Under the pieces are notes generated by a model, which was not told the DNA's origin, searched no databases, and saw only the letters and a list, made by a program, of their open reading frames with translations. Shown here one piece after another: positions 2,580 through 52,064 of a DNA stretch of 64,000 bases. The position numbers were made by a program, and so were the translations under genes. Numbering within the stretch: the first letter of the stretch is position 1; the number at the start of each line of letters is the position of its first letter. The DNA is taken from the IMG/VR virus record IMGVR_UViG_3300031857_000010, positions 152,700-216,699 of that record; one strand, given 5' to 3'.

Positions 2580-2585
2580 CCTTTG

Positions 2586-28956: not shown

Positions 28957-29064
28957 TAGTCAGGACAGGATTCGAACCTGTATGATATCCGCAGATATCT
29001 TTCACTTGCGTTCACTACCTCATCAGGTTTCCGTGATTAGCGTCTACCATTCCGCCACCTGACC
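28957..29064 (-). ncRNA. tRNA-scaffold element 1 (57-nt insert)
   Basis: GTCAGGTGGCGGAATGGTAGACGC-[insert]-TACAGGTTCGAATCCTGTCCTGACTA. Confidence 0.75.
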
Positions 29065-29074
29065 GTTATTAATT

Positions 29075-29803
29075 TTATTTTATATCATAGTAATTCCAAA
29101 TCTCTTCCAACTGTTTAGGATCAACAATAAAAGATTCCCAATCATCTTTGGCAACCTCCACGTCCCTAACGTCAACATAAAAAGTCTTAGGTGTAAATGG
29201 AAATGATTTTATATATCCTTTTTTGCCGACCATTTTACTTCTATCTCCATTCTTATAATCTTCTTCGCTTAACCAAGCAAATCCACTCCAACATACATTA
29301 TTTTGATCCCTTTTAATTATTGCATCTATATAATAAGGTTTACCATCTTTTCCATCTTTAAATAACGCTGAACACCTTTTGTTTTGATACCATGAATTAC
29401 CATCACCAAATTCTCTTACATCACCCCATTCATCATCCATACCAGTTATAGGTGCAATAGGATGAAACAATAGTAGATTATTAATCGACTCAATCAAATG
29501 ATCAAAATCATTAATTGATTTTGTCTTAATCACTTCAACTATTGAATTGATTTCCTCTGTGAATTCATAAGTTAAAGAATCCGGATCTTTAGCTATTTCT
29601 AAAACTATATTACTAGAAATTTTATTTTTTATTTCATGAATTATGGAACCAGCAGTATATGGTGCTGAACCACCACTTTGTCCTGAATCTCTAAATTTTT
29701 TGCAGAGATTTAATATTTCATTTTTGATTGATAAAATATCAAAATCTGGATTTATTTTAGATATAATATCTAATTCTATTTCAGCAAAAGTCCTATTATT
29801 CAT
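29075..29803 (-). CDS. phage hypothetical protein
   Basis: GQSGGSA...PITG.DDEW...YQNKRCS.LFKD. Confidence 0.7.
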   Translation of the reverse strand: MNNRTFAEIELDIISKINPDFDILSIKNEILNLCKKFRDSGQSGGSAPYTAGSIIHEIKNKISSNIVLEIAKDPDSLTYEFTEEINSIVEVIKTKSINDFDHLIESINNLLLFHPIAPITGMDDEWGDVREFGDGNSWYQNKRCSALFKDGKDGKPYYIDAIIKRDQNNVCWSGFAWLSEEDYKNGDRSKMVGKKGYIKSFPFTPKTFYVDVRDVEVAKDDWESFIVDPKQLEEIWNYYDIK

Positions 29804-30068
29804 AATTGTTAATATTAATTTTAAATATTTCCTCTTTAACCTGATTCCAATAAGTCAAATACATAGGGTGTGGTGTATAATATACCGATGAAGTTGAATT
29901 CAAAGTATCATCAAATCGACTATCATCTTTCCTACTTTCTATAATCTGATCACAAACATATTCAGCAGCATTTTTTGCAGTTGCTACATTTTTATGATGA
30001 GACAGCTCATAGCACCAACGCATCATTGCATCCCTGTATAGTTGTTCTGCTTTTTCCTTGGGTGTCAT
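29796..30068 (-). CDS. small protein, MTPKEKA family
   Basis: MTPKEKAE...YW.QVK.EI termini shared with 32995 and 34206. Confidence 0.7.
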   Translation of the reverse strand: MTPKEKAEQLYRDAMMRWCYELSHHKNVATAKNAAEYVCDQIIESRKDDSRFDDTLNSTSSVYYTPHPMYLTYWNQVKEEIFKININNYE

Positions 30069-30391
30069 TTCATGAATTATTTTATTTTTTATTTATGAAT
30101 TCAATACTATCGTCAAATGATTGTGACATACCTTCTTTTAGTTTTTTTAAATCATCAATTGCATCAGATTGTACACGAATGATAAAAAAGGGATTTGACA
30201 TCAGAATTTCAACGTTCATATTATAGAAGTTTCCAAAAACATTTTGCTCTGGATAATCTTCTTTTAATTTGTACCAAAGCTGTTTATATATTTCTAAGCG
30301 TTCAGATTCTGTGTTGCTATATCTCCTTAAAAGGAACATAAATAATTTTTTCATATCTGTTATTCAAATAATAATTTTTTTAGATTAAAAT

Positions 30392-30610
30392 TTAAGAAAC
30401 ATCTCCATAAATTTCGTTATAATATTTTTTACAACTGTTTCCATGTACAGGAACATCTTGACCCCCATCCCAATAAGCTTCCTCAACTTGCTCTTGGAAC
30501 AATTCTTTTGCCTTGATTAAAGTATCACTATATCCGTTGTTAATAGAATTTCTTAATCTCTCCGGCAAATTTTCCATAAACCAATCAATTGCAGTTTTTT
30601 TATTTTCCAT
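30392..30610 (-). CDS. small protein, ME..(K/Q)TA..W family
   Basis: TA..W...AKE..EQ...YYNE.YG shared with 33718 and 34405. Confidence 0.7.
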   Translation of the reverse strand: MENKKTAIDWFMENLPERLRNSINNGYSDTLIKAKELFQEQVEEAYWDGGQDVPVHGNSCKKYYNEIYGDVS

Positions 30611-31331
30611 ATTAGATATTTACAATATTAATCACAACAAAAATTTTAACCTCTCATGTCAACACAATTATCCCTGCCCCATGAAAGTATTTTTTCGTAT
30701 GCTTTTTTCATATCAGGTGTTGCCTCATCATAAACTTCTGCATTCTCGTAGCAACTACGACTCAATCCGCAGAGTATACGATAAAGACCCTCTGCAGTCT
30801 CTTTATCAAATTTCAATTTTTCATTCCTGTCACTTGAAAGTAAATCAGAATCCGGTTGATTAGGTAAAGGAAAATTGATAATTGCATCAATTCTTTGATT
30901 TACGATTTTTATTCTTTCATGATCTGAATCTTTTTGAAATTCATTAAATCTTTGATTGAATTTATTTATATCATCCCAACCACGCATTCCATTGACCCAT
31001 TGTTCTTTCTGAAGTAATTTTCCCTCTAATTTGGATTTGAGTAAAATCAAATCTGATAAGGACATTTTATCTAAAATTGAGTTCATATGTTATTTTTTTT
31101 AAAATTAAAACTCTCTAATAACTCTTGTTTGAGTTGCTCGAATTCAGTTTCATCATGAGGTGAATTTAAACACTGAAATTCTAATTCATCTCTTCTGTTA
31201 TCCATAAGATACAATACATGATAATCAGTTAATTGTTCAGAAATTCTATCGCCAGATTCTTTCATTTCTAATATCTGCGATTGAGATTCGGTGTGTGGAA
31301 ATTTTATTATTAATATTGGCTTGCTCATTTT

Positions 31332-31745
31332 TTATTTTATTAATTCTCTCAAAAAACCAACTCGGTCTTTTTTGAATTCTTTATACTGAGATTCACTGAA
31401 AACATCACTCTTATCATTATTGCAGAAATAACAAGTCAATTCACAGTTTTCTCTTGAATAAATTCCTTTAGGATTCTTCTTGTCCACTTCTAGCCAATAT
31501 CCACGATTAACTCCGGCTCTAGTTTCTCCATGAATGGGAAATCTATTAGAAGTTAATAATCCCCTATGAACAATCATTTGACTTTCCTTCTCCGTCAAAC
31601 CACAGTAGTGACAAAACTTGGGTTTGTTATCATACCAATCACGGAAATCCTCATAACTCAAGAATCCGGATTTCTTTTCTCTGACCTTTGACTTGTACCA
31701 ATCAGATAATTGTTTATCCGTTTTTGGTTTATAGATCCATTCCAT
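31332..31745 (-). CDS. HNH-like endonuclease
   Basis: CHYCG...LEVDKK....YS.ENC...C..CN..KSD. Confidence 0.7.
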   Translation of the reverse strand: MEWIYKPKTDKQLSDWYKSKVREKKSGFLSYEDFRDWYDNKPKFCHYCGLTEKESQMIVHRGLLTSNRFPIHGETRAGVNRGYWLEVDKKNPKGIYSRENCELTCYFCNNDKSDVFSESQYKEFKKDRVGFLRELIK

Positions 31746-32052
31746 GGTTTTTATTTTTTTGTTTTATCAACACCTAATTCAAGAGTTGGTCCACTGATAT
31801 CAACCCACATTTTACAAACAATTAAATTTAAACCCAACATATATCCCCTTACGTGGTTATCATCGCTAAAAATAAATTTTAAAGTGCCTTTGGCATTACC
31901 AACAGCCTTATATGTTTTTAACCACAAACCGAGTTCGTAGTTGTTTCTCATTCTGAATGATTCATAATGCTCAAGTTTTTTCTCCCAGCGGTGCCGGAAA
32001 ACAAATCTTAACTTGAACCATTTTGTTCTAAAGTTTAATATCATTATTTTAT

Positions 32053-32298
32053 TTATTTTAATTTTGCGTAAGCCTGAACTTGGTTTGTGTGAGAATCAAT
32101 ATATTCTTTTATAATTTCAAACTCAACATCTTTACCTTCCCAATCAACGGAATAATCACCGTAATCATTACAGGTTTTAACATCTGTTGGATGTAATGGT
32201 AAAGATAATTTTTCTTCTTTATAATTCAAAGGGGGAAAATTATAGTGAATGTAATTCACAAACCAACCACGATCTGTTTTATTTAAAGTTCCTTTCAT
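32053..32298 (-). CDS. small protein, MKG.L family (with 36028, 36659)
   Basis: MKG.L.K...W.V.Y...LPLHP...VEFE...YAKL. Confidence 0.65.
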   Translation of the reverse strand: MKGTLNKTDRGWFVNYIHYNFPPLNYKEEKLSLPLHPTDVKTCNDYGDYSVDWEGKDVEFEIIKEYIDSHTNQVQAYAKLK

Positions 32299-32564
32299 AA
32301 ATTAACAAAAATTATAAGAGTATTTTTTGTAAATATACAAATTTCCCAACACTTGCATCTCGCCATGTCCTGTGTATTTATTTATTAAATATTTTTCTGC
32401 TTCTTCTTGGGTTGCAAAAGATATTCTCTCTGAAGATATTTCTTTTCTCCGTATTTCTTCCCATTTTAAAAATATTTTTTTTTCAATTATAAATTCTGTT
32501 TTGCAATTTTTACCTGCAACATCGTGAATTATTTTTTTTATTCTAAATTTCATTTGATCTTTTT

Positions 32565-32912
32565 TTAATATAAATCTTCACTGAATAAACCTATCATGGG
32601 ATTTGACAAGAAATTTCTATAAACCTGCCCAGCTTTTATTGCTATTTCCATCGCTTCTAATCTATTAACAAATCTGTTCTGTGATGTCATAAACCCCTGC
32701 TCAGTTTCTCCAACACCATCTGGTGAAAATCTAACAGTTCTTAATTCAGAAAGGGATTTGACTATATCTATGCAATTTGCATGTCTATGACCACAAACCA
32801 CAATACCCTTATCAATATTTTTCGGTGGATAAACTTGATTGGGTAAATCCTTATACCATATTGCAGCACAGGTTATGTACTCCTCAGGCTTAAATGGTTT
32901 GTTGGGATTCAT
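32565..32912 (-). CDS. phage hypothetical protein
   Basis: CAAIW, GHRH, EQGF.TS..RFV.R.EA, LFSEDLY motifs. Confidence 0.7.
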   Translation of the reverse strand: MNPNKPFKPEEYITCAAIWYKDLPNQVYPPKNIDKGIVVCGHRHANCIDIVKSLSELRTVRFSPDGVGETEQGFMTSQNRFVNRLEAMEIAIKAGQVYRNFLSNPMIGLFSEDLY

Positions 32913-32994
32913 TGACAGTGGTGAAATAATTTAAATATTAAATATAAAAATAATACACCTACTACAAATCCTTTAAAAAAATCTCCGGGCCTTT

Positions 32995-33231
32995 TCATAA
33001 CTTTTCTATTTCTTGTTTGACTTGTTTCCAATATTCTCTTGTATCACAATCTTCATAAGACCATTCATCATTACAATCAAACACATCTAATTTGATTATC
33101 TCATCCACAGCTATCAATGCACATTCTTCAGCTAGTTCTTCAATTACAAATCCATCAATGCGATACTTTCCCCTTAGTATTTCTCTTTTATATCTGCTTA
33201 CTAACTCTTCAGCTTTTTCTTTTGGTGTCAT
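32995..33231 (-). CDS. small protein, MTPKEKA family
   Basis: MTPKEKAEEL...CALIAVDEI...YW..VK.EIEKL. Confidence 0.72.
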   Translation of the reverse strand: MTPKEKAEELVSRYKREILRGKYRIDGFVIEELAEECALIAVDEIIKLDVFDCNDEWSYEDCDTREYWKQVKQEIEKL

Positions 33232-33253
33232 AGTGTGTCTGATTTAATGTTTG

Positions 33254-33354
33254 TAGTCAGGACAGGATTCGAACCTGTACGCCTTTCATCCTGAATACCG
33301 CGACAATACGCTGAAAGACCTCGGATAGTGCGTCTACCATTCCGCCACCTGACT
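33254..33354 (-). ncRNA. tRNA-scaffold element 2 (50-nt insert)
   Basis: Same flanking arms as element 1, unrelated insert. Confidence 0.75.
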
Positions 33355-33717
33355 ATTTTATTTATAATTTTTATTACACCGGGAACATTTTGCTTTAGAA
33401 GATATTCTGCCGTTTTCAGGAACAGCTCCGAATTCATCTATGTAATCTTGTAATGAAGCAACCCATTTATGCCAGCCAAAAAAACATAATATCTTTTTCA
33501 TTTTTCTTATTTGGTAGAGTTGAAATAATAAAATAGTCCCCAAAGAATCGCAGCGATCAAAACATGCCAAGTCGTTTTGTTGAGCTGTAATTGATTGCGG
33601 TTCATTATTCCAGTGATGGTGTTCGTCACTGCTATAAACGAGATATATAAAGCAAAAATTAACAAAATGCTTGTAAATATTGGCAAGACAAAATGCATCA
33701 TGTTGAATGTTGAGCAA

Positions 33718-33960
33718 TTATTTTCCATAGATTTCGTTATAATATTCTTCATCTGTTAAATATGTAGTAACTCTACCCCTGCAATCTCCAAATGATACTG
33801 CTTCCATTATCTGCTCCTTCTCCATTTCTTTGGCTTTATATTTATATTCAGTAGCTCTAATACCATAGAGTGCTGCCGATATATTGCCTTCAGTAAAATC
33901 AATTAATAAGTCATTTGTCTTTTCAAATAGCCATTCAACTGCGGTCTGTTTTTTTTCCAT
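33718..33960 (-). CDS. small protein, ME..QTA..W family
   Basis: MEKKQTAVEWL...AKEMEKEQ...YYNEIYGK. Confidence 0.72.
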   Translation of the reverse strand: MEKKQTAVEWLFEKTNDLLIDFTEGNISAALYGIRATEYKYKAKEMEKEQIMEAVSFGDCRGRVTTYLTDEEYYNEIYGK

Positions 33961-34205
33961 AGGTTATTTTTTTAGTTGTTTTTGCATCCATTTAGCACCT
34001 CTGAAGTAAGCATCTATTTCTGCATCACAGCCACTACCATACATTTCTTCCATTGCTAAGATAGATTGGTTGAATAGTTCCTCATCAGTTGGTAGTTCAA
34101 TGGCGGTTACATATTCATCAATATAATTGATAATATGTTTAGCATCTATCATTGATACTTCGCATTTTTCTGCTGCAATTAAAAACATTTCTTTAGTATA
34201 TAGTT

Positions 34206-34448
34206 TCATAACTTTTCTATTTCTTCTTTTACTTTTATCCAATAGTCATGTTTAGATTCATCAGTATTATTCCTGAATATCTCATCTACTGCTATTAAGG
34301 CACATTTTTTACCTCCTTCATATCCTATTTCACAAGTTTTATAATTTGCACCCGCATACTCTTGATATTTATAAGTCTGTATGCTCATTTTATCAAGCAA
34401 CTCTTCAGCTTTTTCTTTTGGTGTCATAGCGGTCTGTTTCTTTTCCAT
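34206..34448 (-). CDS. MTPKEKA-family protein with fused MEKKQTA start
   Basis: MEKKQTA-MTPKEKAEELL...CALIAVDEI...EIEKL. Confidence 0.65.
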   Translation of the reverse strand: MEKKQTAMTPKEKAEELLDKMSIQTYKYQEYAGANYKTCEIGYEGGKKCALIAVDEIFRNNTDESKHDYWIKVKEEIEKL

Positions 34449-34668
34449 ACGTTTCGTTGTAGTATTGTTCAAATTCTTCTTTGTGGAACTTCAGTGAATG
34501 TTCTCCATTAACATAATTCTTTTTAATGTAGTCAAACATCTGCTCCTTCTCCATCTGCTTGGCTTGGTCAATTACTTGCATCCATTCACTTGCGGATAAT
34601 GCTTTTTGTTTTTGGTCACTTTTAATTTGCTCTGTGAGCCAATTAACTGCGGTTTGTTTGGTTTCCAT
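34405..34668 (-). CDS. small protein, ME..QTA..W family
   Basis: METKQTAVNWL...AKQMEKEQ...YYNETYGK. Confidence 0.7.
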   Translation of the reverse strand: METKQTAVNWLTEQIKSDQKQKALSASEWMQVIDQAKQMEKEQMFDYIKKNYVNGEHSLKFHKEEFEQYYNETYGKETDRYDTKRKS

Positions 34669-34894
34669 AGGTTATTTAAATGTTACGTTAATAATGTTTT
34701 TAGTCACTATACTATTACCATCTTTGTAAATGGTATCACCTTTTCCAGTTCTATTGTTCTCTTTCGAAGTTCAATAATTTCGTCTTTTTCCTTTAATTCC
34801 GCTTCCTGTATTTTGACAATATTATTGAGCAAGTCGATAACTTCTTTCTGTAAGTCAAATAACTTTTGGAATTCCTCTTGTTCCATTTAAAATC

Positions 34895-35107
34895 CTATTT
34901 TGTATGATTTTTACAATTTCCCTTATGTGTCAATACCGTTGCATTTCCCCAAGGACCATACAAGTACTCACAACTATCTATGATCACTATCTCGACATGA
35001 TTACCACCTTCTAAAATATATTTTGTTTTTTGAACCGGAACATTAGGTTCACTACACGAAATGAAACAGATCAATAGTAGACTTATTGCAATAAATATTT
35101 TTTTCAT
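34895..35107 (-). CDS. small lipoprotein
   Basis: MKKIFIAISLLLICFISC lipobox; IDSCEY, LTHKGNC. Confidence 0.65.
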   Translation of the reverse strand: MKKIFIAISLLLICFISCSEPNVPVQKTKYILEGGNHVEIVIIDSCEYLYGPWGNATVLTHKGNCKNHTK

Positions 35108-35343
35108 ATTTCTTCTTTTTTGAATATTAATATTGCCAACGAAATAAAAATATGTAAAATCAAAGAAAAAGCTCCGGAAATAATTAAAAGCCACCAAGTT
35201 TTGTAAGGTGTACTTCCGAAGTTTGATAATAAAAAATAAAATAGCCACGCTAAAACAATACTTCTTTTGTGTGAAAGTAAAATTTCCTTGAATAATTTGA
35301 ATGTTATTTTCTTTTTCATGATTATAATAATTTATTTTTTATT

Positions 35344-36024
35344 TTATATTTCTAAAATATTTCCATGAGATGTAATACCCTTATCAAATTTTCCATCCTC
35401 CACACAAGTTCCATTGGAAAATATTGTCCTGCATCCGTACACTTGTTTTGTACCAGCATTCGTAATTACTCCACAATTATGAATGTGACCGAACAAACAT
35501 AATTTAGGTTGTAATTCCAACATCTTCTTCTTCATGTTTGAACAACCACACAAATCATAATTATTATTCCTATCAATTGTCAAATCCAAAATTCCTTTTG
35601 GTGGTCCGTGAGAAATTACAATATCAGTATCGTCCGGAATTGAATCCCAAACCTTGAACATCTTTTCACGTTTCCTATTCCATGCCCAACCTACACCAAA
35701 TTCAGGTGTGCATGGTGTGCCCCAAATGTTTATTCCCCCAATCTGTGTTGAAGAGTTTTCTAAATAGATAATTCCTTTAGCGTGTATTTGGCCCGGAGTT
35801 ACCAACCTCTTTTCGATGCTGGTATCGTGATTTCCGGCAACAAATATTTTATATTTGATATCTAAACTAGAAAACCATTCCAAAAAATTTAATACCTCCG
35901 GTTCATTCAAATAGGGACTTGATGGATTTGAAACATCACCGGAATGAATAATCATATCAATACCATCAGGAATTTTGAGAAACCCATGTAAAGTGTGGGT
36001 ATCACTGATATGCCATATTTTCAT
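35344..36024 (-). CDS. calcineurin-like metallophosphoesterase
   Basis: SDTH, HSGD, AGNHD, SHGPP, FGHIH. Confidence 0.92.
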   Translation of the reverse strand: MKIWHISDTHTLHGFLKIPDGIDMIIHSGDVSNPSSPYLNEPEVLNFLEWFSSLDIKYKIFVAGNHDTSIEKRLVTPGQIHAKGIIYLENSSTQIGGINIWGTPCTPEFGVGWAWNRKREKMFKVWDSIPDDTDIVISHGPPKGILDLTIDRNNNYDLCGCSNMKKKMLELQPKLCLFGHIHNCGVITNAGTKQVYGCRTIFSNGTCVEDGKFDKGITSHGNILEI

Positions 36025-39587: not shown

Positions 39588-39922
39588 ATTGTATCATAAA
39601 CCATCTAATTTTGTTTTGAATTTCTTGTCCCCGAATGTTACAGATTTGAAACCTCCTCGTGGACCTCTTTCTATTTCTGTAATTGGACCATATAAGTGTA
39701 TCGCCTCTTCAGCAGTTAAGTTTCTGGTTATTAAAAACCAATTTGGATAAACACATTTTAAACCACCAAATTTTGATAATGAAGAAAATCGCTCCTCTCC
39801 AATATGGCTTGTGATTCTAAATCCCCAACTTATAGTTTCTCCACTATAAGAATCATAAATCATTGGTCCAAATGAAGATAAACAATCTTCAAATCCTTCA
39901 GGTTTGTTCATGGTTTTTTCTT

Positions 39923-43310: not shown

Positions 43311-43379
43311 AACCCCTTTTTTATTTTTTTAATAATTTATAATTTCTTTTATTAAGGACAAATATAATAATTATTTTAA

Positions 43380-44186: not shown

Positions 44187-44226
44187 AATTTGTTTTAAAT
44201 ATTTGTTTCGTATTTGAACGTATTTT

Positions 44227-45200: not shown

Positions 45201-45403
45201 GGGCTGTTGTTTAACCTGAGGGTTTTAAAATTAAACAAAAGATAAGGGGTTAAAAAACAACTGTTTGTGGTATTAGATAAATCCAAAAAAAGGGTGTCTT
45301 ATAATTTACATTATGTTAAATGAATTAGAAAAATCCAACCAATAAAAAATCCCCAGTGGGTCAAAGACCAAACACCGGGGATTAAGGAAGGGGGGCTTAT
45401 TAA

Positions 45404-45838
45404 TTAATCTTGTGATTTAAATTCTTCTGACTCTTTTAAATCTATTCGGATCTTTTGAGTTTTGTTTACGGTTTCCAGAAAAAGATTCCAAGTTTTGGTT
45501 CCGGAGTTCCGGGTATTCATAAAATGCTTTTCAGTGATCTGATCCACGAAATAAAAATCAGATGAAATTTTACGAAGGATGTTCTTTAACCTAGAGAACA
45601 TAATTTGTTTTTGTCTGGAATCTGGGTTGGATAGAAAATCTTCTATATAATTTAAAAGTTCTTCTACTGTCAAATTCCCTTCAGTAAAGGTTGGGATTTT
45701 TTCCCCGTTAAGCCAAGCGACTCTTTTTGCAGCTTCTAGTTTTGAGTGGAAATTTGACTCTTCGATCCATTTTCCTACCGGGGTATAAAAACCTACAGTC
45801 CAAGTCCCATGAGCTTTTTCATAATAGATATATTTCAT
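45404..45838 (-). CDS. hypothetical protein
   Basis: WTVGFY.P.G.W..ES......EAA.RV..LNG module. Confidence 0.65.
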   Translation of the reverse strand: MKYIYYEKAHGTWTVGFYTPVGKWIEESNFHSKLEAAKRVAWLNGEKIPTFTEGNLTVEELLNYIEDFLSNPDSRQKQIMFSRLKNILRKISSDFYFVDQITEKHFMNTRNSGTKTWNLFLETVNKTQKIRIDLKESEEFKSQD

Positions 45839-46236
45839 TAGTTATAATTAGGGATGGTAAAATACCTCTGAAAGAATTCCGGGGTTACGAGGTCTTTGAC
45901 AGTACTGAGGTCTTTGACGGTACCTACGAGCATGCCATTTTTTTTGGTGAATATTGATCCCGCATCAGGAAAACAGTAAACACCATTTTCGTTAAGGGTT
46001 GCTATTATTCTTATGAAGAATAGTTCATTTTGTTTTTTTTGTTCCAGTGTCATCTTGAATTTAAACGTAAGGGACCTGCGGGAAGTTACAGGTCGATTTA
46101 ATATTTCAGATATACGATTATTAAAAAATAATTTACATTTTTGGGTAAAATTTCAGTTGAAGAAAAAAAATATAATTTTCTTAAACCTTTTTTAGTTATA
46201 TTAGTATTGATTGTAAAGGAAGTAAAAAAACAATAA

Positions 46237-47088
46237 ATGAGCAAGATTTTAATTATACTGGTTCTTTTACTCAGGATCCCAACCTGCAGGAACGTTGATC
46301 ACGAATTTGTGGACGGGGAAGACATGAGCAAAAAGGAGCCTTATAAATATTATGAGCTTTGTCTTAGGTCCATGTTAACGAATCCGGATTCCATGAATTT
46401 TGGACTGGGACCGGTGGTTCCTCCTATTAACAGTTTAAATTCAAAAGTTTTCCATGATACATTAGTTGATCAGACTATTGAATTAAGGTTAATGACGGAT
46501 GACGGAATGAATATAGTATTTAGGAATTTGACCAATCCTGAGATTTATAATGATATTGAATCTTATGAATTCAAGGCTTATGATTCAAAAAATAATATTG
46601 TTTACCTATCACATAAAAAACAATATGGATACTTCAGGTTCTTTGGAGTCAGTTTAAATACCGGGAACCAGTTTACCGTATATGTTAATGATACTCGGTC
46701 ATCCAATGAAAAAATGTATTCTTGGAAATATTCCCCGGATATGGATTATTTGTTGAAGTCTGGTGATCTAGATAATGATATTTACGGTTGGGGTCTGGTT
46801 ACGCTAAAAAATGGACAGGAGGGTCAAGCGATGTTTGAAAGATATACTGAATTTGTGACTAATATTAAATGGGTGACTTTTGACCAATTCAGTTATGTTC
46901 TTACCAAGATTCCTTTCCGGGATGGATATAAGTATGATAAGGATTATGAATTTTATTATTCGTTGATGGAGGGGAATGCTCTTCCCGGGATTAGATTAAA
47001 CGGAGATTACCTGTATCCAGTTACATATATTTTGGATGTCAAAGGCCATTTAATATCAGAAAAGATGACTGAAGTTAGGATAAAATGA
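46237..47088 (+). CDS. hypothetical exported protein
   Basis: 283 aa, hydrophobic N-terminus; TAAAC-N16-AGTATTGA promoter at 46182-46210. Confidence 0.7.
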   Translation: MSKILIILVLLLRIPTCRNVDHEFVDGEDMSKKEPYKYYELCLRSMLTNPDSMNFGLGPVVPPINSLNSKVFHDTLVDQTIELRLMTDDGMNIVFRNLTNPEIYNDIESYEFKAYDSKNNIVYLSHKKQYGYFRFFGVSLNTGNQFTVYVNDTRSSNEKMYSWKYSPDMDYLLKSGDLDNDIYGWGLVTLKNGQEGQAMFERYTEFVTNIKWVTFDQFSYVLTKIPFRDGYKYDKDYEFYYSLMEGNALPGIRLNGDYLYPVTYILDVKGHLISEKMTEVRIK

Positions 47089-47279
47089 CGGCATTTGACT
47101 CAATATGACAAGGTTTTTAACATTATGGTTAAAAAAGTTAGAAATATAACAATATAAAAATCAACAAGTTAGGAAAGACAAAGATTATTTATTCACATTG
47201 CTTGTCTATGTCATAAAAATAACAGATATTTGTCTTCTAAGTTATTAATTAAGTTAAACAATATAAATCAACGAGGAAC

Positions 47280-47957
47280 ATGAAAAATTCAAGGAAGGAA
47301 AAAAAGGCCAAGTTTGCAGATAAGGATCTACAAGATCTTAAGATGCTAGAAGAAATCAAATCTGGAAATGTGAATGCATATGAGGTGATATACAACAGGT
47401 ATTACCGTTATATTCAGTATCACTGTTTTATGTCTGTCAAAGACCAGCAATTGGCCAATGATTTGACTGTAGAGATTTTGACAAAAATTTATTTAAATAT
47501 TGACAAATACTCGGTCAAGTATACTTTTAATTCTTGGGTGTGGAGTATTGTCAAGAATTACGTCGTAGATTATATAAGGAAGAATAAGAACGAACCAGTT
47601 AACAGCAATCGAAATGCATCGATCGCTATTCAGGAAACCAGAGATGAGGGATCTGAATTCAGCACAGTGTATTCGAACCAGTTGGATTCTGGAGATATTA
47701 ATCCGGAGGAATTGATGCAAGCCAAGTCTACAGAGAGGATACGTAGAGAATTTGTATTGAACTTGTTGAATGGTTTGAATGAGCGAGAGAGGATGATCAT
47801 CATTCATTATTACTTTGACGAGATGAGTTATGATGAGATTGCTGCTAAGCTTAACATTGGACTAAGCCTTATGAAGGTAACCTTGTTAAGGACCAAGGAG
47901 AAGCTCAAGAATAAGATCGGAAGTTTTGACAAGATTTCTCACCTGCTTGCAGCCTAA
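47280..47957 (+). CDS. RNA polymerase sigma-70 factor, ECF subfamily
   Basis: Region 2 (AYE.IY.RY...LA.DL..E...K.Y.....Y.....F..W...I..N...DY.RK) and region 4 (L.ERER.I....YF..MSY.EIA..L.I.....K..L.R.K..L). Confidence 0.93.
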   Translation: MKNSRKEKKAKFADKDLQDLKMLEEIKSGNVNAYEVIYNRYYRYIQYHCFMSVKDQQLANDLTVEILTKIYLNIDKYSVKYTFNSWVWSIVKNYVVDYIRKNKNEPVNSNRNASIAIQETRDEGSEFSTVYSNQLDSGDINPEELMQAKSTERIRREFVLNLLNGLNERERMIIIHYYFDEMSYDEIAAKLNIGLSLMKVTLLRTKEKLKNKIGSFDKISHLLAA

Positions 47958-47971
47958 GCAACGGGTGATAT

Positions 47972-48439
47972 ATGAAAGAACTAAAAAGAATATTTAAAAG
48001 ATTAAAAAGATTTTTTGAAACGGATAGGTGGTTATTTCTGGATGATACCAGAGAGCCACCTATTCATTTAAAAAGAATATTCTATATTGTCCGTGATTAT
48101 GATGATTTTGTGGAGTACATTGAAACATATGGTATTCCGGAGATTATTTCCTTTGACCATGATTTAAATTTAGAGCATACTAATTTCTTTTTTGAGAATG
48201 GGGGTTTTAGGAATCCGCCAGATCCGAGATATGAGATTTTTAAATTTAAAACTGGATATGATTGTGCTTTATGGTTAATTGACTATTGTAAAAGGAACAA
48301 TAAAGAGTTAAAAAAGGTATTTGTACATAGTCATAATCCAATGGGTCAAAGAAACATTTACAACCTTATATGTAACTTTCAGAAAAAAGAATACGGTAAA
48401 ATAAACTGCAAAATAGTAAGATGGAAATACCAAAAATAG
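47972..48439 (+). CDS. cyclic-phosphate-processing receiver-domain protein (second copy)
   Basis: LFLDD.R.P, ISFDHDL, TGYDCA.WL, VHSHNP.G. Confidence 0.82.
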   Translation: MKELKRIFKRLKRFFETDRWLFLDDTREPPIHLKRIFYIVRDYDDFVEYIETYGIPEIISFDHDLNLEHTNFFFENGGFRNPPDPRYEIFKFKTGYDCALWLIDYCKRNNKELKKVFVHSHNPMGQRNIYNLICNFQKKEYGKINCKIVRWKYQK

Positions 48440-48617
48440 ATCCGAACTTAGACAATCAGATCAAGTTCGTAGAATTCATGATCGAGACACAGAATATTGA
48501 AATACTTGTGGCGATAAAAAACAGTCTTTTAGAACTAAAAAAGATAAAAGAAGAAAAAAAGATGTAACTTTGTGATAAGACATTACGTTTAAATTGAAAA
48601 ATCTAAAACTAAAAACT

Positions 48618-49058
48618 ATGTTTGAAATCATTAAAAACCTACCGGTACCTGAAAAAACAGTTGCATCTAAGATGCCAAAACGTGCTCCTAAATATCCATT
48701 TGCGGATATGGAGATTGGTGATTGTTTGGCCTTTAACGCAGAAAGTATTAAAGACCCAGTTTACAAAAATGTATATGGTTCAGCAATGGCATATGCTCGT
48801 CGTGTAAGAGAAGGTTACACATTCCGTTTCGGTAAAATCGAGGAAGGCAAGTTTGGTTGCTGGAAGATTGTCTCGACAAAAAATGTCAAAGTTGAAGAGC
48901 CAGAGAATAAGCGTAAACGCAATTCAACGATTAACATTACAAAAGACATGTTGATTTCAGCTTTAGAAAGTGAAGGTACATTGAATGGTGCTTCTCGTAT
49001 TTTGAATATTTCGAGTAGGACATTTAGTCGGTTGAAACAAAAATTTGAACTCGTATAA
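48618..49058 (+). CDS. putative DNA-binding protein with C-terminal Fis-like HTH
   Basis: KYPF..M.IGD N-domain; AL...G....ASRIL.IS.RT..R; ECF-type promoter 48563-48593. Confidence 0.65.
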   Translation: MFEIIKNLPVPEKTVASKMPKRAPKYPFADMEIGDCLAFNAESIKDPVYKNVYGSAMAYARRVREGYTFRFGKIEEGKFGCWKIVSTKNVKVEEPENKRKRNSTINITKDMLISALESEGTLNGASRILNISSRTFSRLKQKFELV

Positions 49059-49091
49059 GTATTTAACAACAATTTAAAAACAACTTCTAAA

Positions 49092-49763
49092 ATGAAAAAC
49101 ACTATTTTCTACGTTATTGCTTTTTTTGGTGTAGTAAGCTTGAGTAGCTGCTATACTACACAAAGTGTTCCTTACAATGATTACAAGTTCAGCTTGGTAG
49201 ATCAGCAAGGAAATGTCAAAGACACTGGTGATGCTTTGACTTACACTGATTCCACCATCATTGCCTCTTTCGCTGTTGGCAAGAAAGATATTTCTATGGT
49301 TATGAGAAATCAATCTTCCAGTACGATCAAGGTTCTATGGGACGAATCATTGTTTATTAAGAATGGTAATCCCGGAAAGGTGATGCATGCTGGAGTCAAA
49401 TTCACTGACCGCAATCAAGCACAGCCTCCAAGTGTGATTCCTGCGGGTACGACATTTGACGATGTAATTGTACCTACGGATAATGTTTATTGGAGAGAGG
49501 GTTATTACAGTAAGTACGGTTCATCTCCGGGTGGATGGGAAAAGAAAGATCTATTACCATCTTATACTTCTAAAGGTGATCAGTTCGGAGTGTTCATGCC
49601 AATGACTGTTGGTGGTACCACAAAGGAATATAATTTTAATTTCCGTGTGGAGGATACGAAAACTGTATACAAGCAGGAGAGAACCATGGATGTTGCTAAA
49701 ACAACTTGGTTGACAATTGGTCTGACAGTGGTGCCTCTAATTATTCTGTTGGGTTCATATTAA
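49092..49763 (+). CDS. lipoprotein
   Basis: Lipobox LSSC; C-terminal TM. Confidence 0.72.
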   Translation: MKNTIFYVIAFFGVVSLSSCYTTQSVPYNDYKFSLVDQQGNVKDTGDALTYTDSTIIASFAVGKKDISMVMRNQSSSTIKVLWDESLFIKNGNPGKVMHAGVKFTDRNQAQPPSVIPAGTTFDDVIVPTDNVYWREGYYSKYGSSPGGWEKKDLLPSYTSKGDQFGVFMPMTVGGTTKEYNFNFRVEDTKTVYKQERTMDVAKTTWLTIGLTVVPLIILLGSY

Positions 49764-49787
49764 TAATTTAAATTAAAAAATATAGTT

Positions 49788-50453
49788 ATGGGAATTCTTT
49801 GTAAAATGTTGGATCACAAGAATGAAGCTATAAACTTCTGGGGTGAAAACTGCGAATATCTTTTGTTCAAATGCAAACGTTGTAATCATGAGGAGATCTT
49901 TTGTTCTTACGAAGGCAAAATTCTCAACAATGATGAGTTTGGAAAAAAGGTTTTAGACAAGATGATGAAAGACAAGGAATTCTCAAAAGCTTGTCATATC
50001 CACAGTCAGTTTGTAAAAGCTGAGCATAGCAATCCTTTTAATTTCAAAAAGCAAGAGGAGGAATATGAAAGGATCAGGAAGGAATTTAATTTGACGGGTT
50101 TAAAAAGACCAGCATGTCCAATTGAATTATTCCGTGCGGGATTGTGGAAGGACATAAAGAATGATTCTGGTACGGCAAAGAAAAAGTCAAATACCAAAAT
50201 CAAGACCAAACCTATTGTAAATGATCCGGAGCCGGATAATGAGCAGGGAGAGATTTACAATGTTTTCGAACCAGAAGACAATTCTTTTACCAACAAGGTC
50301 AAACCTATAAAATATAGTTTTGAATCTATCAGCAAGGGAGAGACTCTGGAAGAGCTTGAGAGATTAGAAAAGATCTATGCAGCTAGGGAGAATTATGAAA
50401 AGGCTGCTGATATTTACAAAAAGATTCAAAAGCTCAAAATGAACAAAAAGTAA
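49788..50453 (+). CDS. hypothetical protein with C-terminal UVR (UvrB/C-type) motif
   Basis: ENYEKAADIYKKI. Confidence 0.6.
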   Translation: MGILCKMLDHKNEAINFWGENCEYLLFKCKRCNHEEIFCSYEGKILNNDEFGKKVLDKMMKDKEFSKACHIHSQFVKAEHSNPFNFKKQEEEYERIRKEFNLTGLKRPACPIELFRAGLWKDIKNDSGTAKKKSNTKIKTKPIVNDPEPDNEQGEIYNVFEPEDNSFTNKVKPIKYSFESISKGETLEELERLEKIYAARENYEKAADIYKKIQKLKMNKK

Positions 50454-50479
50454 CCCTTAACCCAAACCACACCACGAAG

Positions 50480-50509
50480 ACCCGCAGGATTTATCTGCGG
50501 GTTTTTTTT
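50480..50509 (+). terminator. intrinsic terminator
   Basis: ACCCGCAG-GATTTAT-CTGCGGGT followed by a T-tract. Confidence 0.85.
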
Positions 50510-50947
50510 GTTTATTATAATATTATAATTAATTTTATTAAATGGAATTCATAGAAAATAACTTTGAGATAGAGCATATTAATTTGACTGATGCAAATTA
50601 TATAAACTTAAATATAAATGATAAGCTGAAAGGTGTTCGTAGGAATCAATACGGTTTGGTCTTGTCAAAGATCAAATTAAAAAATAATGATGTTTACGAG
50701 ATAGTTTTAAATTCTAACTCTAACGATAGAGCTACTGTAAGGTCGTATGTTGATGGGGATGAAAAATTAGATTCCTATTCTATACAGGAATACTTTATTA
50801 ACGGAAAAAATAATTATTTAGAATTCAGTAATGAATCTTACTGTATGGTAATCAATTCAAATGAACCGATGAAAAACAAATATGTTTTTTCTGATTACCG
50901 GGATGCGATTGGATATTTAGAATCGCTTGAAAAATAAGTTGTGGTAA

Positions 50948-51421
50948 TTAAATAAAATTTAAAAATAATTCATCATCATACTTTGTGTGTTTTTCTGCAT
51001 GACAATTAGAACAAAGCATGATACATTTATCTAATTCTTTTTTGATAAATTCCCATGATTTGTGATTCATTTCAGCAATTGAAAAATCTTTTTCATCTGG
51101 ATTCAGATGATGAAATTCTAAAGCAGCTAAACTTTTAGAATAACCACAATCTAAACACTTCCCCCCTTTATATTCTACTGCTCTTTTTTTTAATCTAAAA
51201 CGTCTAATTCTCGTTATACATGTTGCACAACATTTTCTATTATGAGAATTTTCCTTCAATTTTTTATTACACAAAGCACAATTTATATTTTTAATTTTTA
51301 CTCTAAAAATTTTATGCTTTTTTAACCACTTAGCTATTGTTGTTCTATGAACATTGTATAATTTCCCAATTTCAATGTTAGTTTTACCTTCATTAATTAA
51401 TTTTTCCAAATCTTTTTTCAA
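50948..51421 (-). CDS. HNH endonuclease with N-terminal HTH
   Basis: HTH (EIGKLYNVHRTTI..W); GGKC..CGY.K...ALEFHH..P..K.F...ELDKC..LC.NCH...H. Confidence 0.88.
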   Translation of the reverse strand: MKKDLEKLINEGKTNIEIGKLYNVHRTTIAKWLKKHKIFRVKIKNINCALCNKKLKENSHNRKCCATCITRIRRFRLKKRAVEYKGGKCLDCGYSKSLAALEFHHLNPDEKDFSIAEMNHKSWEFIKKELDKCIMLCSNCHAEKHTKYDDELFLNFI

Positions 51422-51467
51422 AATATTTTTTAAAATAAATATTAAGAAAAAAAGAAAAATTACTTTT

Positions 51468-51506
51468 GGTATTCAAAAATTGCTCTACCAACTGAGCTAT
51501 ATTACC
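51468..51506 (-). pseudogene. tRNA 5' fragment (acceptor strand + D-arm only)
   Basis: GGTAATA-TA-GCTCAGTTGGTAGAGC-A with no anticodon or T arm after it. Confidence 0.6.
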
Positions 51507-51687
51507 TTTTACCTTCTATTATTACTTTTGGTTCTACTACTCCTTTTGATTCTAAGTATTTGACAGCGTTATAAATATTGTTATGAACTCTGTACGGTGT
51601 TCTAGGTATAAGGCCACATTTTGGTGGATACACATGAACGGAATCACTACAGGAAAAAGTAATAATTTTAGTTTCCATTTTTATTTG

Positions 51688-51807
51688 TAGTCAGGACAGG
51701 ATTCGAACCTGTATGAAGAGTATGTGTGTCTCTTCTCCTATGGGTTTACCTCAAGGGTTTCCATCTGCCATCGCACGTTGTAGCGTCTACCATTCCGCCA
51801 CCTGACT
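51688..51807 (-). ncRNA. tRNA-scaffold element 3 (69-nt insert)
   Basis: Same flanking arms as elements 1 and 2. Confidence 0.75.
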
Positions 51808-51897
51808 ATTTGTTTTTAAAATATCTTGTAACGGCAATTATGCCTAATATACAGATACTTGAATAAAATATTATCCAAGCCATAATTTTAATTTTTG

Positions 51898-52052
51898 TTG
51901 TCAGGACAGGATTCGAACCTGTATTGTGTAGAGGATAAGGCTTCAACGTCGGTCGTGCTACACCACCCGACAGTATTTTGACAACTCAAGGTTGTCCAAG
52001 TATGCTTAAGCACCATCACCTTATCGCTTGCGTTTCCGGTACGCACCTGACC
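51898..52052 (-). ncRNA. tRNA-scaffold element 4 (~106-nt insert, variant D-arm)
   Basis: GTCAGGTGCGTACCGGAAACGC-[insert]-TACAGGTTCGAATCCTGTCCTGAC. Confidence 0.7.
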
Positions 52053-52064
52053 ATTTAATTTATG

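What the first reader, a model, noticed from the sequence alone, without database searches (positions are those of the whole stretch)
28957..52052. Dispersed tRNA-scaffold RNAs: constant acceptor/D/T arms carrying unrelated structured inserts
Seen: four intergenic copies (28957-29064, 33254-33354, 51688-51807, 51898-52052). Three have identical GTCAGGTGGCGGAATGGTAGACGC 5' and TACAGGTTCGAATCCTGTCCTGAC 3' flanks (Leu-type tRNA frame); the fourth has the same 3' flank and a variant D-arm. The anticodon/variable region is replaced by different GC-rich inserts of 57, 50, 69 and ~106 nt with their own hairpins (GATATC-TGCG-GATATC; GAAGAG...CTCTTC; GACAAC-CTTGA-GTTGTC). Inserts 1 and 3 share GGAAACC..TGAGGTA; inserts 3 and 4 share a CTTGA loop. 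No canonical anticodon arm. Constant frame plus variable cargo is not what random pseudogenisation gives. Inference: stable RNase P/Z-processed carriers for small RNAs, decoys for tRNA-targeting nucleases or synthetases, mRNA processing signals, or a tRNA-derived mobile repeat serving as a recombination site for gene cassettes.
Basis: partly seen in the sequence, partly recalled or inferred. Interest (0 to 1): 0.82.

Follow-up and report, generated by a model that had tools for sequence, protein, structure and literature searches.

The report
Phage tRNA-frame RNAs with swappable cargo
The four loci are genes for non-decoding, tRNA-shaped RNAs from a very large, apparently undescribed family in uncultured freshwater phages, in which a constant tRNA-Leu-like top half carries hundreds of different structured RNA modules that are shared between unrelated phages; what the modules do is unknown.

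Summary
Four co-oriented minus-strand elements share exact tRNA-like flanks (chance expectation 0.00). Rfam's tRNA model spans c1-c3 at 37-42 bits, with 47-61 extra bases where the anticodon arm should be.

The window holds a small sample of a huge family. None was found in 50,697 cultured-phage records. The 17 matches in cellular genomes are all MAG contigs; the one examined lies in a phage region.

The frame is a tRNA-Leu(CAA)-type top half: AGUCAGG/CCUGACU acceptor, A73, Leu D arm, UUCGAAU T loop, U-1 and C74. It shows compensatory changes. The bottom halves (20-130 nt) are not introns, have no anticodon arm, and fall into many families with covarying helices.

Cargo and frame are separable. 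The c3 cargo also sits on a different, fully compensated frame, and the c1 hairpin also lies free in an inter-tRNA spacer. c1 and c3 are 97-98% identical in phages of 29-49% G+C with unrelated flanks.

Best reading: a tRNA-processing and stability chassis carrying exchangeable functional RNA modules. Transcription, processing and function are untested here because the read-mapping call failed.

The parts
28957..29064 (-). Element c1 (108 nt, G1 to A73). Acceptor 5' strand 29064-29058; U8 G9 29057-29056; Leu-type D arm 29055-29040; cargo 29039-28982 (58 nt: hairpin CAC-GGAA-ACCU-GAUG-AGGU-A-GUG, a linker, then the variable-arm-like hairpin GAUAUC-UGCG-GAUAUC); T arm 28981-28965; acceptor 3' strand 28964-28958; A73 at 28957; C74 at 28956.
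   Evidence: Exact flanks. Rfam tRNA 38.3 bits over model positions 1-71 with 47 nt unaligned. A 97.5% identical element sits in the unrelated 48.5% G+C contig L240, and the core hairpin lies in an inter-tRNA spacer in L239.
33254..33354 (-). Element c2 (101 nt). Acceptor 5' strand 33354-33348; D arm 33345-33330; cargo 33329-33279 (51 nt: about 10 nt linker, then an 8-bp helix GUCUUUCA/UGAAAGGC enclosing GCG-UAUUGU-CGC and ending 2 nt before the T stem); T arm 33278-33262; acceptor 3' strand 33261-33255; A73 at 33254.
   Evidence: Exact flanks. Rfam tRNA 41.8 bits. Fold. Only copies from the same phage were found elsewhere (L215, L241).
51688..51807 (-). Element c3 (120 nt). Acceptor 5' strand 51807-51801; D arm 51798-51783; cargo 51782-51713 (70 nt, including AUGG-AA-ACC-CUUGA-GGU-AAAC-CCAU and the hairpin GAAGAG-N9-CUCUUC next to the T stem); T arm 51712-51696; acceptor 3' strand 51695-51689; A73 at 51688.
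   Evidence: Exact flanks. Rfam tRNA 37.0 bits. The cargo differs by 0-2 substitutions in 8 other contigs with unrelated flanks, and in L243 it sits on a different compensated frame.
51898..51972 (-). Element c4, inner unit (75 nt). Acceptor UGUCGGG (51972-51966) pairs with CCUGACA (51905-51899); the D region is degenerate; a long hairpin GUGUAG...CUACAC follows; T arm 51922-51906; A73 at 51898; C74 at 51897.
   Evidence: Exact 3' flank. Rfam tRNA 27.9 bits, below the 29-bit threshold. ARAGORN's 'tRNA-Ile(tat)' call here is spurious. Fold.
51973..52052 (-). Structured stretch 5' of c4 (80 nt). It starts GGUCAGGUG like a chassis 5' end and contains the hairpins UGCGU-ACCGGAA-ACGCA and GACAAC-CUUGA-GUUGUC. 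It is either a 5' extension of c4, as in T4 rnaC, or the true 5' half of a 155-nt element.
   Evidence: Sequence and fold. No independent relatives were found. T4 rnaC has a comparable 5' extension.
52064..52137 (-). Genuine tRNA-Glu(UUC) directly upstream of c4. The order gene, tRNA-Glu, c4, 25-codon ORF, c3, gene is packed with gaps of 11 nt or less on the RNA-gene side.
   Evidence: ARAGORN and Rfam 58.8 bits; ORF list.

Best explanation
c1-c4 are genes for non-decoding tRNA-like RNAs. Each is built from two separable parts. (1) A constant 'top half' derives from a tRNA-Leu(CAA)-type gene: a 7-bp acceptor stem AGUCAGG/CCUGACU, discriminator A73, U8, a Leu-type D arm with G18G19, U48, and a T arm with loop UUCGAAU. 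It is flanked by U at -1 and C at +74. These are the features that RNase P, the tRNA 3'-end and CCA machinery and tRNA-elbow binders recognise. The RNA would therefore be cut precisely out of the long polycistronic early transcript and accumulate as a stable, tRNA-shaped molecule (inferred). (2) A 'bottom half' has no anticodon arm. One of hundreds of unrelated structured modules takes its place, usually a single-stranded linker followed by a long helix sitting where the class II variable arm would be. The module is the functional payload (inferred). Its target is unknown. Modules and frames are recombined and passed horizontally between unrelated phages. Shown here: anatomy, family size, RNA-level covariation of frame and cargo, separability of frame and cargo, and distribution across unrelated genomes. 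Inferred: transcription, processing, stability, and that the cargo is what acts.
For: Exact flanks, 0.00 expected by chance. Full-length tRNA-model matches for c1-c3 with the extra bases at the anticodon-arm position. Frame under RNA-level selection: compensatory T-stem changes and wobble-only acceptor changes when the other flank is fixed. In a cargo-anchored family of 25 sequences, 99.4% of cells are paired and 9 pairs have double changes, against 1.3 in shuffles (0/500) and 24-52% paired when partners are slid. Processing signatures: U-1 in 82%, C74 in 98%, A73 in 91%, U48 in 84%; genuine tRNAs of the same phages share the N73-CAAA trailer. A Bacteroidota-type -7 box lies 11-15 nt upstream in a subset, 38 upstream against 4 downstream. 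Cargo under selection: recurrent families with covarying helices and conserved loops. Cargo separable from frame: the c3 cargo sits on a different compensated frame in L243, and the c1 hairpin lies in an inter-tRNA spacer in L239. Horizontal spread: c3 is 98.4% identical between the window and L167 while their genuine tRNAs are 73-78% identical. c1 is 97.5% identical in a 48.5% G+C contig against 28.6% here. No DNA or protein similarity in the flanks. Dedicated frame: 461 genuine tRNAs in the same loci use 296 acceptor stems, while 232 of 281 non-canonical elements use the AGUCAGG type. Precedent: T4 rnaC has a T arm and acceptor, no anticodon arm, and lies in the tRNA cluster.
Against: The inserts fold only modestly better than shuffles (mean z -0.87). 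No target or partner was found: no antisense match in the phage genome, only chance matches in 301 Bacteroidota genomes, no Rfam family for any cargo, and no consistently linked protein gene. If only processing and stability mattered, the acceptor stem could drift freely. Its near-invariant sequence, even in a cargo-anchored sample, suggests an additional sequence-specific reader that this model does not name. A few members on the same frame are real-looking decoders, such as tRNA-Lys(UUU) in L041, so the frame is not exclusively a carrier.
Confidence: 0.58

Rival explanations
1. Aminoacylated adaptors. The frame keeps what bacterial LeuRS reads (A73 and the Leu-type D arm and tertiary core, not the anticodon). 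The RNAs would then be charged with leucine and used outside normal decoding, as aminoacyl donors for a transferase or to titrate LeuRS or EF-Tu, with the bottom half directing where the charged end goes.
For: A73 in 91% of elements, A15/U48 and G18G19 retained, and a D arm identical to host tRNA-Leu. The acceptor stem is conserved in sequence beyond what pairing requires. A partly encoded 3' end (C74 in 98%) and a full CCA encoded in a minority. That LeuRS ignores the anticodon is established knowledge for E. coli and was not tested here.
Against: 7% of elements have G73 and 2% have U73. The phage encodes no class Ia synthetase or CCA-adding enzyme. No transferase or other partner gene is linked. 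The c3 cargo works with a quite different acceptor stem in L243. Nothing about charging could be tested.
Confidence: 0.12
2. Decoys or sponges for tRNA-directed immunity. The RNAs would bait host nucleases or toxins that attack tRNAs, for example Septu or retron effectors that cut the variable arm of a class II tRNA, or toxins that act on acceptor ends. The variable arms would diversify in an arms race.
For: The part retained next to the T arm is a variable-arm-like helix in 98 of 145 elements. c1 lies directly after a Tad3-family Thoeris-inhibitor gene, in an accessory-gene region. Several different elements occur per phage. Defences that cut class II variable loops, and phage tRNAs that counter them, are documented (PMC13096335).
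Against: A bait should resemble the host tRNA that is attacked. The cargos resemble no tRNA arm, are 20-130 nt long and mutually unrelated. Identical cargos occur in phages of 29% and 49% G+C, which probably have different hosts. The c1 hairpin also occurs with no frame at all.
Confidence: 0.12
3. mRNA punctuation. The elements exist mainly so that RNase P and the 3' processing enzymes cut the long polycistronic transcript between genes, as tRNAs do in mitochondria. This would set the stability or translation of neighbouring mRNAs. The middle only has to fold stably.
For: In the window each element is wedged between genes (stop, 3-10 nt, element, 7-23 nt, ATG). Family-wide, an upstream ORF ends 5-15 nt before the element in 56 of 188 cases, against 5 of 182 random positions. 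All elements are co-oriented with the genes.
Against: Many elements stand in arrays, 60-130 nt apart, among tRNAs with no ORFs between them. The model gives no reason for 70-nt cargos to be identical across unrelated phages or for conserved loops. An ordinary tRNA would do the same job. The built-in UAG (U-1 A1 G2) is used as a stop no more often than chance.
Confidence: 0.07
4. DNA-level element. The conserved ends would act as recombination sites (attC-like or homing-endonuclease targets) that shuffle small gene cassettes, or the unit would be a tRNA-derived mobile repeat. The RNA fold would be incidental.
For: Constant ends that pair with each other and a variable middle, lying between small co-oriented genes in a variable genome region. 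An HNH endonuclease gene lies 270 nt downstream of c3. The same cargo is found on different D-arm variants and frames, which implies recombination inside the element. Similarity stops exactly at the element ends.
Against: The variation is strand-specific and of RNA type: G-U wobbles, and compensatory pairs in the acceptor, T and cargo helices. The universal tRNA tertiary nucleotides are kept. No recombinase, integrase or endonuclease is consistently nearby and there is no reverse transcriptase in the genome. No terminal inverted repeats or target duplications are visible at the c1 and c3 junctions.
Confidence: 0.05
5. Decaying tRNA pseudogenes, or intron-containing tRNA genes whose inserts are removed to give an ordinary tRNA.
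For: The frame is clearly tRNA-derived. A few near-canonical members exist, such as a Leu(CAA)-like element with an 8-nt loop in L014 and tRNA-Lys(UUU) in L041.
Against: ARAGORN in intron mode gives essentially random anticodons with no Leu preference. The bases right after the D arm do not form an anticodon stem or loop with U33 in c1-c3. Only 4 of 145 inserts are closed by a stem. The cargos are about 39-46% G+C in AT-rich genomes, are conserved and covary. No RtcB or Rnl1 ligase is encoded in the phage.
Confidence: 0.04

Closest known systems
Phage T4 'species 1' stable RNA (rnaC) in the T4 tRNA cluster
   Same: A phage-encoded small stable RNA lying among tRNA genes next to a homing-endonuclease gene. 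It has a canonical T arm (CCGGGUUCGAAUCCCGG), a 3' strand pairing with an upstream strand to form an acceptor-like stem, a hairpin abutting the T arm and no anticodon arm. Its 5' extension resembles the layout of c4. Its function is still unknown, to my knowledge.
   Different: No sequence relationship. rnaC does not reach the tRNA model (best 17.5 bits to tRNA-Sec) whereas c1-c3 score 37-42 bits. rnaC has no Leu-type D arm, is a single gene and not a modular family, and has no evidence of cargo swapping. T4 rnaD shows no tRNA-like features.
Engineered 'tRNA scaffold' for recombinant RNA expression (Ponchon and Dardel; PMC3753655)
   Same: The same logic: keep the acceptor, D and T arms so that the cell processes and stabilises the RNA, and replace the anticodon region with an arbitrary structured RNA.
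   Different: That system is man-made. Its cargo is inserted into the anticodon stem, which closes it. Here only 4 of 145 cargos are closed by a stem, and most take the position of the variable arm after a single-stranded linker.
tmRNA
   Same: A tRNA-like acceptor and T-arm domain whose anticodon arm is replaced by a large structured insert. It is processed by tRNA enzymes.
   Different: tmRNA has the G3-U70 alanine identity pair, a tag reading frame, pseudoknots and a reduced D loop. Here position 3-70 is U-A, there is no conserved ORF, and ARAGORN's tmRNA search finds nothing.
tRNA-linked small RNAs released by tRNA processing (E. coli 3'ETS-leuZ sponge; murine gammaherpesvirus 68 tRNA-miRNA units)
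   Same: Functional small RNAs that owe their ends to RNase P or RNase Z cleavage of an adjoining tRNA. The c1 hairpin in the L239 inter-tRNA spacer has exactly this arrangement.
   Different: In those systems the cargo lies beside the tRNA, not inside it, and there is no shared frame carrying hundreds of cargos.
Integron attC sites
   Same: Conserved, mutually pairing ends with a variable structured centre of 57-141 bp, lying after small co-oriented cassettes.
   Different: attC sites act as folded single-stranded DNA for an integrase. Here the conserved internal features are tRNA tertiary nucleotides, the variation is RNA-type, and no integrase is linked.
GOLLD and ROOL RNAs
   Same: Structured RNAs of unknown function in phage tRNA neighbourhoods, first seen in lake metagenomes. 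A GOLLD RNA lies in the same tRNA cluster as two of these elements in L186.
   Different: They are large (over 400 nt), not tRNA-shaped, and have no constant-frame, variable-cargo design.

Membership tests
tRNA (Rfam RF00005) | Score at or above the curated gathering threshold (29 bits), spanning the whole model | tested here: met
   c2 41.8, c1 38.3 and c3 37.0 bits over model positions 1-71. c4 inner unit 27.9 bits, below threshold.
tRNA (Rfam RF00005) | 7-bp acceptor stem, D arm with G18G19, and T arm with a UUCRANY loop | tested here: met
   Present in c1-c3. Covariation in the acceptor and T stems. c4 lacks a proper D arm.
tRNA (Rfam RF00005) | Anticodon arm: 5-bp stem and 7-nt loop with U33 and a purine at 37, presenting an anticodon | tested here: not met
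   The model leaves 47-61 nt unaligned there. ARAGORN does not call c1-c3. The bases after position 26 give no stem or U33. These are therefore not decoding tRNAs.
Intron-containing tRNA | Removing one contiguous insert restores a canonical anticodon arm with a consistent anticodon | tested here: not met
   ARAGORN -i on 302 elements gives scattered, essentially random anticodons, and 127 get no call at all. The inserts are far too short for group I introns. No RtcB or Rnl1 in the phage.
tmRNA | G3-U70 pair, tag-peptide reading frame with a resume codon, pseudoknots | tested here: not met
   Position 3-70 is U-A. ARAGORN (which searches for both tRNA and tmRNA) reports no tmRNA. No conserved ORF in the cargos.
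T4 rnaC-type phage stable RNA | Sequence or model-level homology to T4 rnaC | tested here: not met
   No Rfam family covers rnaC. There is no similarity beyond the generic T loop, and no hit in 50,697 phage records with c3 as query. The resemblance is architectural only.
T4 rnaC-type phage stable RNA | A stable, processed RNA demonstrated in infected cells | not testable with these tools
Integron attC recombination site | Linked integron integrase and R/L core sites; function as folded DNA | tested here: not met
   No recombinase family among the neighbours of about 215 loci. The conserved positions are tRNA tertiary nucleotides with RNA-type wobble variation. Core-site motifs were not searched for specifically.
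Y RNA / YrlA tRNA-like RNAs | 5' and 3' ends form a Ro-binding helix, with the tRNA-like module internal | tested here: not met
   Here the ends form the acceptor stem itself. No Rfam Y-RNA match at E up to 5.

The most novel reading that the evidence does not exclude
Phages of lakes use a natural, modular 'tRNA scaffold' system. A shared, sequence-specific tRNA-Leu-derived chassis acts as a universal processing, stability and perhaps charging handle. Hundreds of RNA aptamers or regulators are plugged into it, swapped by recombination, and traded between phages of different hosts. The system would be an RNA counterpart of the protein accessory and anti-defence gene pool, and the nearly invariant acceptor stem would be read by a still unknown dedicated factor.
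Probability: 0.35. Interest if true: 0.9.

Novelty: new variant of a known kind. Interest (0 to 1): 0.8.

Why it matters
If the RNAs are made and processed as inferred, this is a large and so far unnoticed layer of phage-encoded RNA. That opens hundreds of compact, evolution-tested structured RNAs to functional study. It gives a natural counterpart to the laboratory tRNA scaffold. It also offers a route to the half-century-old puzzle of what the tRNA-like stable RNAs in phage tRNA clusters (T4 species 1) are for. The near-identity of single elements across phages of 29-49% G+C points to a target common to many bacteria, or to a very active exchange of RNA genes among phages. On the practical side, tRNA finders and annotation pipelines either miss these genes or mislabel them as odd tRNAs. 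Examples here are ARAGORN's 'tRNA-Ile(tat)' at c4 and its 'Pro(agg)' and 4-base-anticodon calls elsewhere.

Tried and rejected
1. Introns: ARAGORN intron mode gives random anticodons. Rejected.
2. Copy of a host tRNA: only 17 exact hits in 185,579 species genomes. All are MAG contigs, and the one examined lies next to a Mu-type portal. Host tRNA-Leu genes share the D and T arms but not the acceptor. Rejected.
3. Antisense to the phage's own mRNAs: the longest complementarity is 11 nt, at or below shuffles. For the plus strand only the trivial self-match was seen; other plus-strand matches were not examined separately.
4. Mimic or antisense of a conserved Bacteroidota RNA: the c3 cargo gives only chance 15-19-nt matches in 301 genomes.
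5. Known RNA families in the cargos: no Rfam match at E up to 5 except tRNA. The CUGAUGA...GAAA in c1 does not form a hammerhead stem II.
6. Dedicated partner protein nearby: the commonest neighbour family occurs in only 17 of about 215 loci and is a small protein of unknown function.
7. Phage-encoded CCA-adding enzyme, Rnl1, RtcB, class Ia synthetase or reverse transcriptase: none in the 83%-complete genome. The Rnl1 control matched no genome, so that negative is weak.
8. Family-wide sequence motif in the cargos: RRGGU and GAGGUA are 2-4-fold enriched but not universal and not positioned. GGAAACC..GAGGUA is confined to the c1 and c3 families.
9. Built-in UAG (U-1 A1 G2) as the stop of the upstream gene: used no more often than chance.
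A metagenome scan for frame+CCA found 88 matches, all inside DNA contigs.
11. Relatives of c4: the other hits of its 17-nt hairpin pattern are chance matches in coding DNA.
12. Cultured phages: no match in the GenBank phage collection.

Full report
**What is in the window**

The four loci read as RNA on the minus strand, the strand of almost all genes in this region: 93 of 108 ORFs of 80 aa or more. The 23-nt 3' flank ACAGGTTCGAATCCTGTCCTGAC occurs exactly four times and the 24-nt 5' flank GTCAGGTGGCGGAATGGTAGACGC exactly three times. Shuffles give 0.00 matches. The window is the last 64 kb of a 216.7-kb, 28.6% G+C IMG/VR virus record from lake water, and these four are its only copies.

Rfam's tRNA model matches c1, c2 and c3 end to end at 38.3, 41.8 and 37.0 bits (threshold 29). 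It aligns the acceptor stem, D arm and T arm and leaves 47-61 nt unaligned where the anticodon arm belongs. ARAGORN does not call them.

Copy 4 differs. Its 3' strand CCUGACA pairs perfectly with an inner strand UGUCGGG at 51972, a U1-A72 flip of the usual A1-U72, and Rfam prefers this 75-nt unit at 27.9 bits. The 80 nt upstream begin like a chassis 5' end and are structured. No independent relative exists to decide between a 75-nt unit with a 5' extension and a 155-nt unit.

All four are tightly wedged between genes. c3 and c4 form a cluster with a genuine tRNA-Glu and a 25-codon hydrophobic ORF.

**The family is very large**

Contigs carry up to 7 copies within 5 kb. From the fetched loci I extracted about 300 distinct elements. 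Within a locus they are always co-oriented, and in several phages they are interspersed with genuine tRNAs inside tRNA clusters, once beside a GOLLD RNA.

Cellular genomes essentially lack the frame. There are 17 exact hits among 185,579 species genomes, all on MAG contigs and many in Bacteroidota bins. The one I examined lies next to a Mu-type portal and a head-tail adaptor, so it is phage DNA. No cultured phage in 50,697 GenBank records has it. A scan of JGI metagenomes for the minority variant with an encoded CCA still found 88 contigs.

**The frame**

The 5' strand is AGUCAGG in nearly all members, although it was not part of the 3'-flank search. Over 208 distinct non-decoding elements, A1-U72 occurs in 95%, A73 in 91%, G9 in 93%, the T loop UUCGAAU in 75% and U before the T stem (the U48 position) in 84%. 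The D arm GGCGGAAU(U)GGUAGACGC and the T arm match genuine Bacteroidota tRNA-Leu(CAA) genes, whose acceptor stems are nevertheless different. The phages' own tRNA-Leu genes also use other acceptor and T stems.

Outside the RNA, U at -1 (82%) and C at +74 (98%) followed by A-rich sequence are conserved, and genuine tRNAs of these phages share the N73-CAAA trailer. U at -1 is the base bacterial RNase P prefers (established knowledge). A Bacteroidota-type -7 promoter box TAnnTTTG lies upstream of 38 of 309 elements, against 4 downstream, and in 25 of them it starts 11-15 nt before A1. This indicates transcription in this orientation and Bacteroidota hosts for at least part of the family.

Selection acts on the RNA. 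With the 5' flank fixed, the T stem shows compensatory variants (GCAGG/CCUGC, ACUGG/CCAGU, GAAGG/CCUUC) and the acceptor changes only to wobbles. To avoid circularity I collected one cargo family using a cargo-only pattern, giving 45 contigs and 25 distinct full elements. About 26 of 30 distinct segments still carry AGUCAGG, and one has a fully compensated alternative, AGUGGUA/UGCCGCU. On this alignment 99.4% of cells pair. Nine pairs have changes on both sides, against 1.3 in shuffles (0 of 500 reach that). Sliding the partners drops pairing to 24-52%.

In a frame-agnostic scan of 2.05 Mb, 461 genuine tRNAs use 296 different acceptor stems, while 232 of 281 non-canonical tRNA-like elements use the AGUCAGG type. 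The loci were chosen for this frame, so that share is inflated.

**The bottom halves**

Inserts between the D and T arms run from 20 to about 130 nt (median 58). They start with U or A at position 26 and end with U. In 98 of 145 a helix ends within 3 nt of the T stem, like a class II variable arm, and only 4 of 145 are closed by a stem at their base. They are therefore not simple replacements of the anticodon loop.

They are not introns. ARAGORN in intron mode returns essentially random anticodons.

They cluster into 41 small families plus 198 singletons in this limited sample. Within families the long helix covaries while loops stay fixed. Examples are GGGUACA/UGUACUC, GGUAACA/UGUUAUC and GAACACA/UGUGUUC in one family, and CG to UA in five sequences of another.

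A very few members on the same frame look like real decoders, for example tRNA-Lys(UUU) in L041, or like a near-canonical Leu(CAA) with an 8-nt loop. This suggests that the family arose from a tRNA-Leu(CAA)-type gene.

**Frame and cargo are separable, and the elements travel**

The 70-nt c3 cargo occurs with 0-2 substitutions in eight other contigs. In L243 it sits on a different, fully compensated frame (acceptor GGUGAGA/UCUCACC, T stem GCAGG/CCUGC). In others the D arm differs. The c1 core hairpin (32 of 33 nt identical) lies in L239 in a 56-nt spacer between two tRNAs of a 22-tRNA array, with no frame.

Between the window and L167, genuine tRNA genes are 73-78% identical while the c3 element is 98.4% identical, and similarity stops at the RNA ends. 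c1 is 97.5% identical in L240, a 48.5% G+C contig, against 28.6% here. Contigs carrying c3 range from 30 to 38% G+C. The 8-9 kb flanks share nothing at DNA or protein level.

L215, L241, L273 and L274 are the same phage from other samples and do not count as independent.

**What it most likely does**

The conserved half is the part of a tRNA that RNase P, the 3'-end and CCA enzymes and other elbow or acceptor readers recognise. The variable half is where the information lies. The same cargo appears either inside the frame or free between two tRNAs, and both arrangements would be released by tRNA-end processing.

I therefore favour a processing-and-stability chassis carrying exchangeable functional RNA modules (confidence about 0.58). 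mRNA cleavage between neighbouring genes would be an unavoidable side effect in this window. The setting fits accessory or counter-defence functions: the gene directly upstream of c1 is a Tad3-family Thoeris inhibitor (87.9 bits), an HNH endonuclease follows c3, and the region is full of small genes.

This model does not explain why the acceptor stem is conserved in sequence and not only in pairing. That fact keeps alive the rivals in which the top half is itself read, either through leucylation (A73 and a Leu core, which LeuRS reads without the anticodon) or as bait for tRNA-directed toxins.

Searches for a target failed. I found no antisense match in the phage, no match in 301 Bacteroidota genomes, no Rfam family, no linked protein, and no tRNA-handling enzymes or reverse transcriptase in the phage.

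**Comparison with what is known**

Six full-text literature searches found no description of this family. The October 2026 preprint on bacterial tRNA mimics concerns other RNAs.

The nearest natural precedent, tested here, is T4 rnaC. It has a canonical T arm, an acceptor-like stem, a hairpin beside the T arm, no anticodon arm and a 5' extension. It is not homologous, scores only 17.5 bits against any tRNA model and is a single gene. The nearest concept is the engineered tRNA scaffold (PMC3753655). Work on Septu and retron defences that cut class II variable loops (PMC13096335) gives context for the decoy rival.

**Limits**

There is no transcript-level evidence. Most loci were found through the frame itself. 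The host of this particular 28.6% G+C phage is unknown.

Noticed in passing
window 29075-29803 (-): The 242-aa gene directly upstream of c1 matches Pfam PF25185, the Tad3 type I Thoeris inhibitor (E 5.4e-25, 87.9 bits against a cut-off of 27). This is a candidate anti-defence gene.
   Followed up: partly
window 50948-51421 (-): An HNH homing-type endonuclease with an N-terminal HTH domain (phrog_2255, E 2e-29) lies about 270 nt downstream of c3. This recalls segB in the T4 tRNA cluster.
   Followed up: partly
window 51806-51884 (-): A 25-codon hydrophobic ORF (MAWIIFYSSICILGIIAVTRYFKNK) fits exactly between c4 and c3. Its UAG stop is formed by U-1, A1 and G2 of c3. Family-wide, this built-in UAG is used as a stop no more often than chance.
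   Followed up: yes
window 1113-2660 (-): A cluster of 14 tRNA genes. Rfam finds one, with a GAA (Phe) anticodon loop by my reading and an unusual T loop, at 2586-2658 that ARAGORN misses.
   Followed up: no
window 30392-30610, 33718-33960, 34405-34668 (-): Three paralogues of a 72-87-aa protein with a 'KQTAVEWL...EMEKEQ...YYNETYG' pattern. This was the commonest protein family near the elements in other contigs (17 loci). Its function is unknown.
   Followed up: partly
window 23258-25657 (-) and 8716-9825 (-): Auxiliary metabolic genes: a 799-aa PEP-utilising dikinase-type enzyme (PPDK_N 393.7 bits, plus the mobile and PEP-binding domains) and a class I/II aminotransferase. GP88 is at 53051-53794.
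   Followed up: no
L186:1293-1710 (+): A full-length GOLLD RNA (262 bits) inside a phage tRNA cluster that also holds elements of this family.
   Followed up: no
L239:2615-2675 (+): A 61-nt tRNA-like gene apparently lacking a D arm (Rfam tRNA 33.7 bits) in a 22-tRNA array, directly after the free c1-type hairpin.
   Followed up: no
L041 (71-nt element; exact coordinates not recorded): A fully canonical tRNA-Lys(UUU) built on the same AGUCAGG/ACAGG frame (stem CCGAU/AUCGG, loop CUUUUAA). The frame is therefore also used by rare genuine decoders.
   Followed up: partly
L066, L099, L216 (elements with long D regions): Some family members carry a second insert of 20-40 nt inside the D loop, between GGCGGAA and GGUAGACGC.
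   Followed up: no
L115:2440-2520 (approximately): A member of the largest cargo family has the cargo, T arm and 3' acceptor strand but no recognisable 5' half. It is possibly a truncated copy.
   Followed up: no
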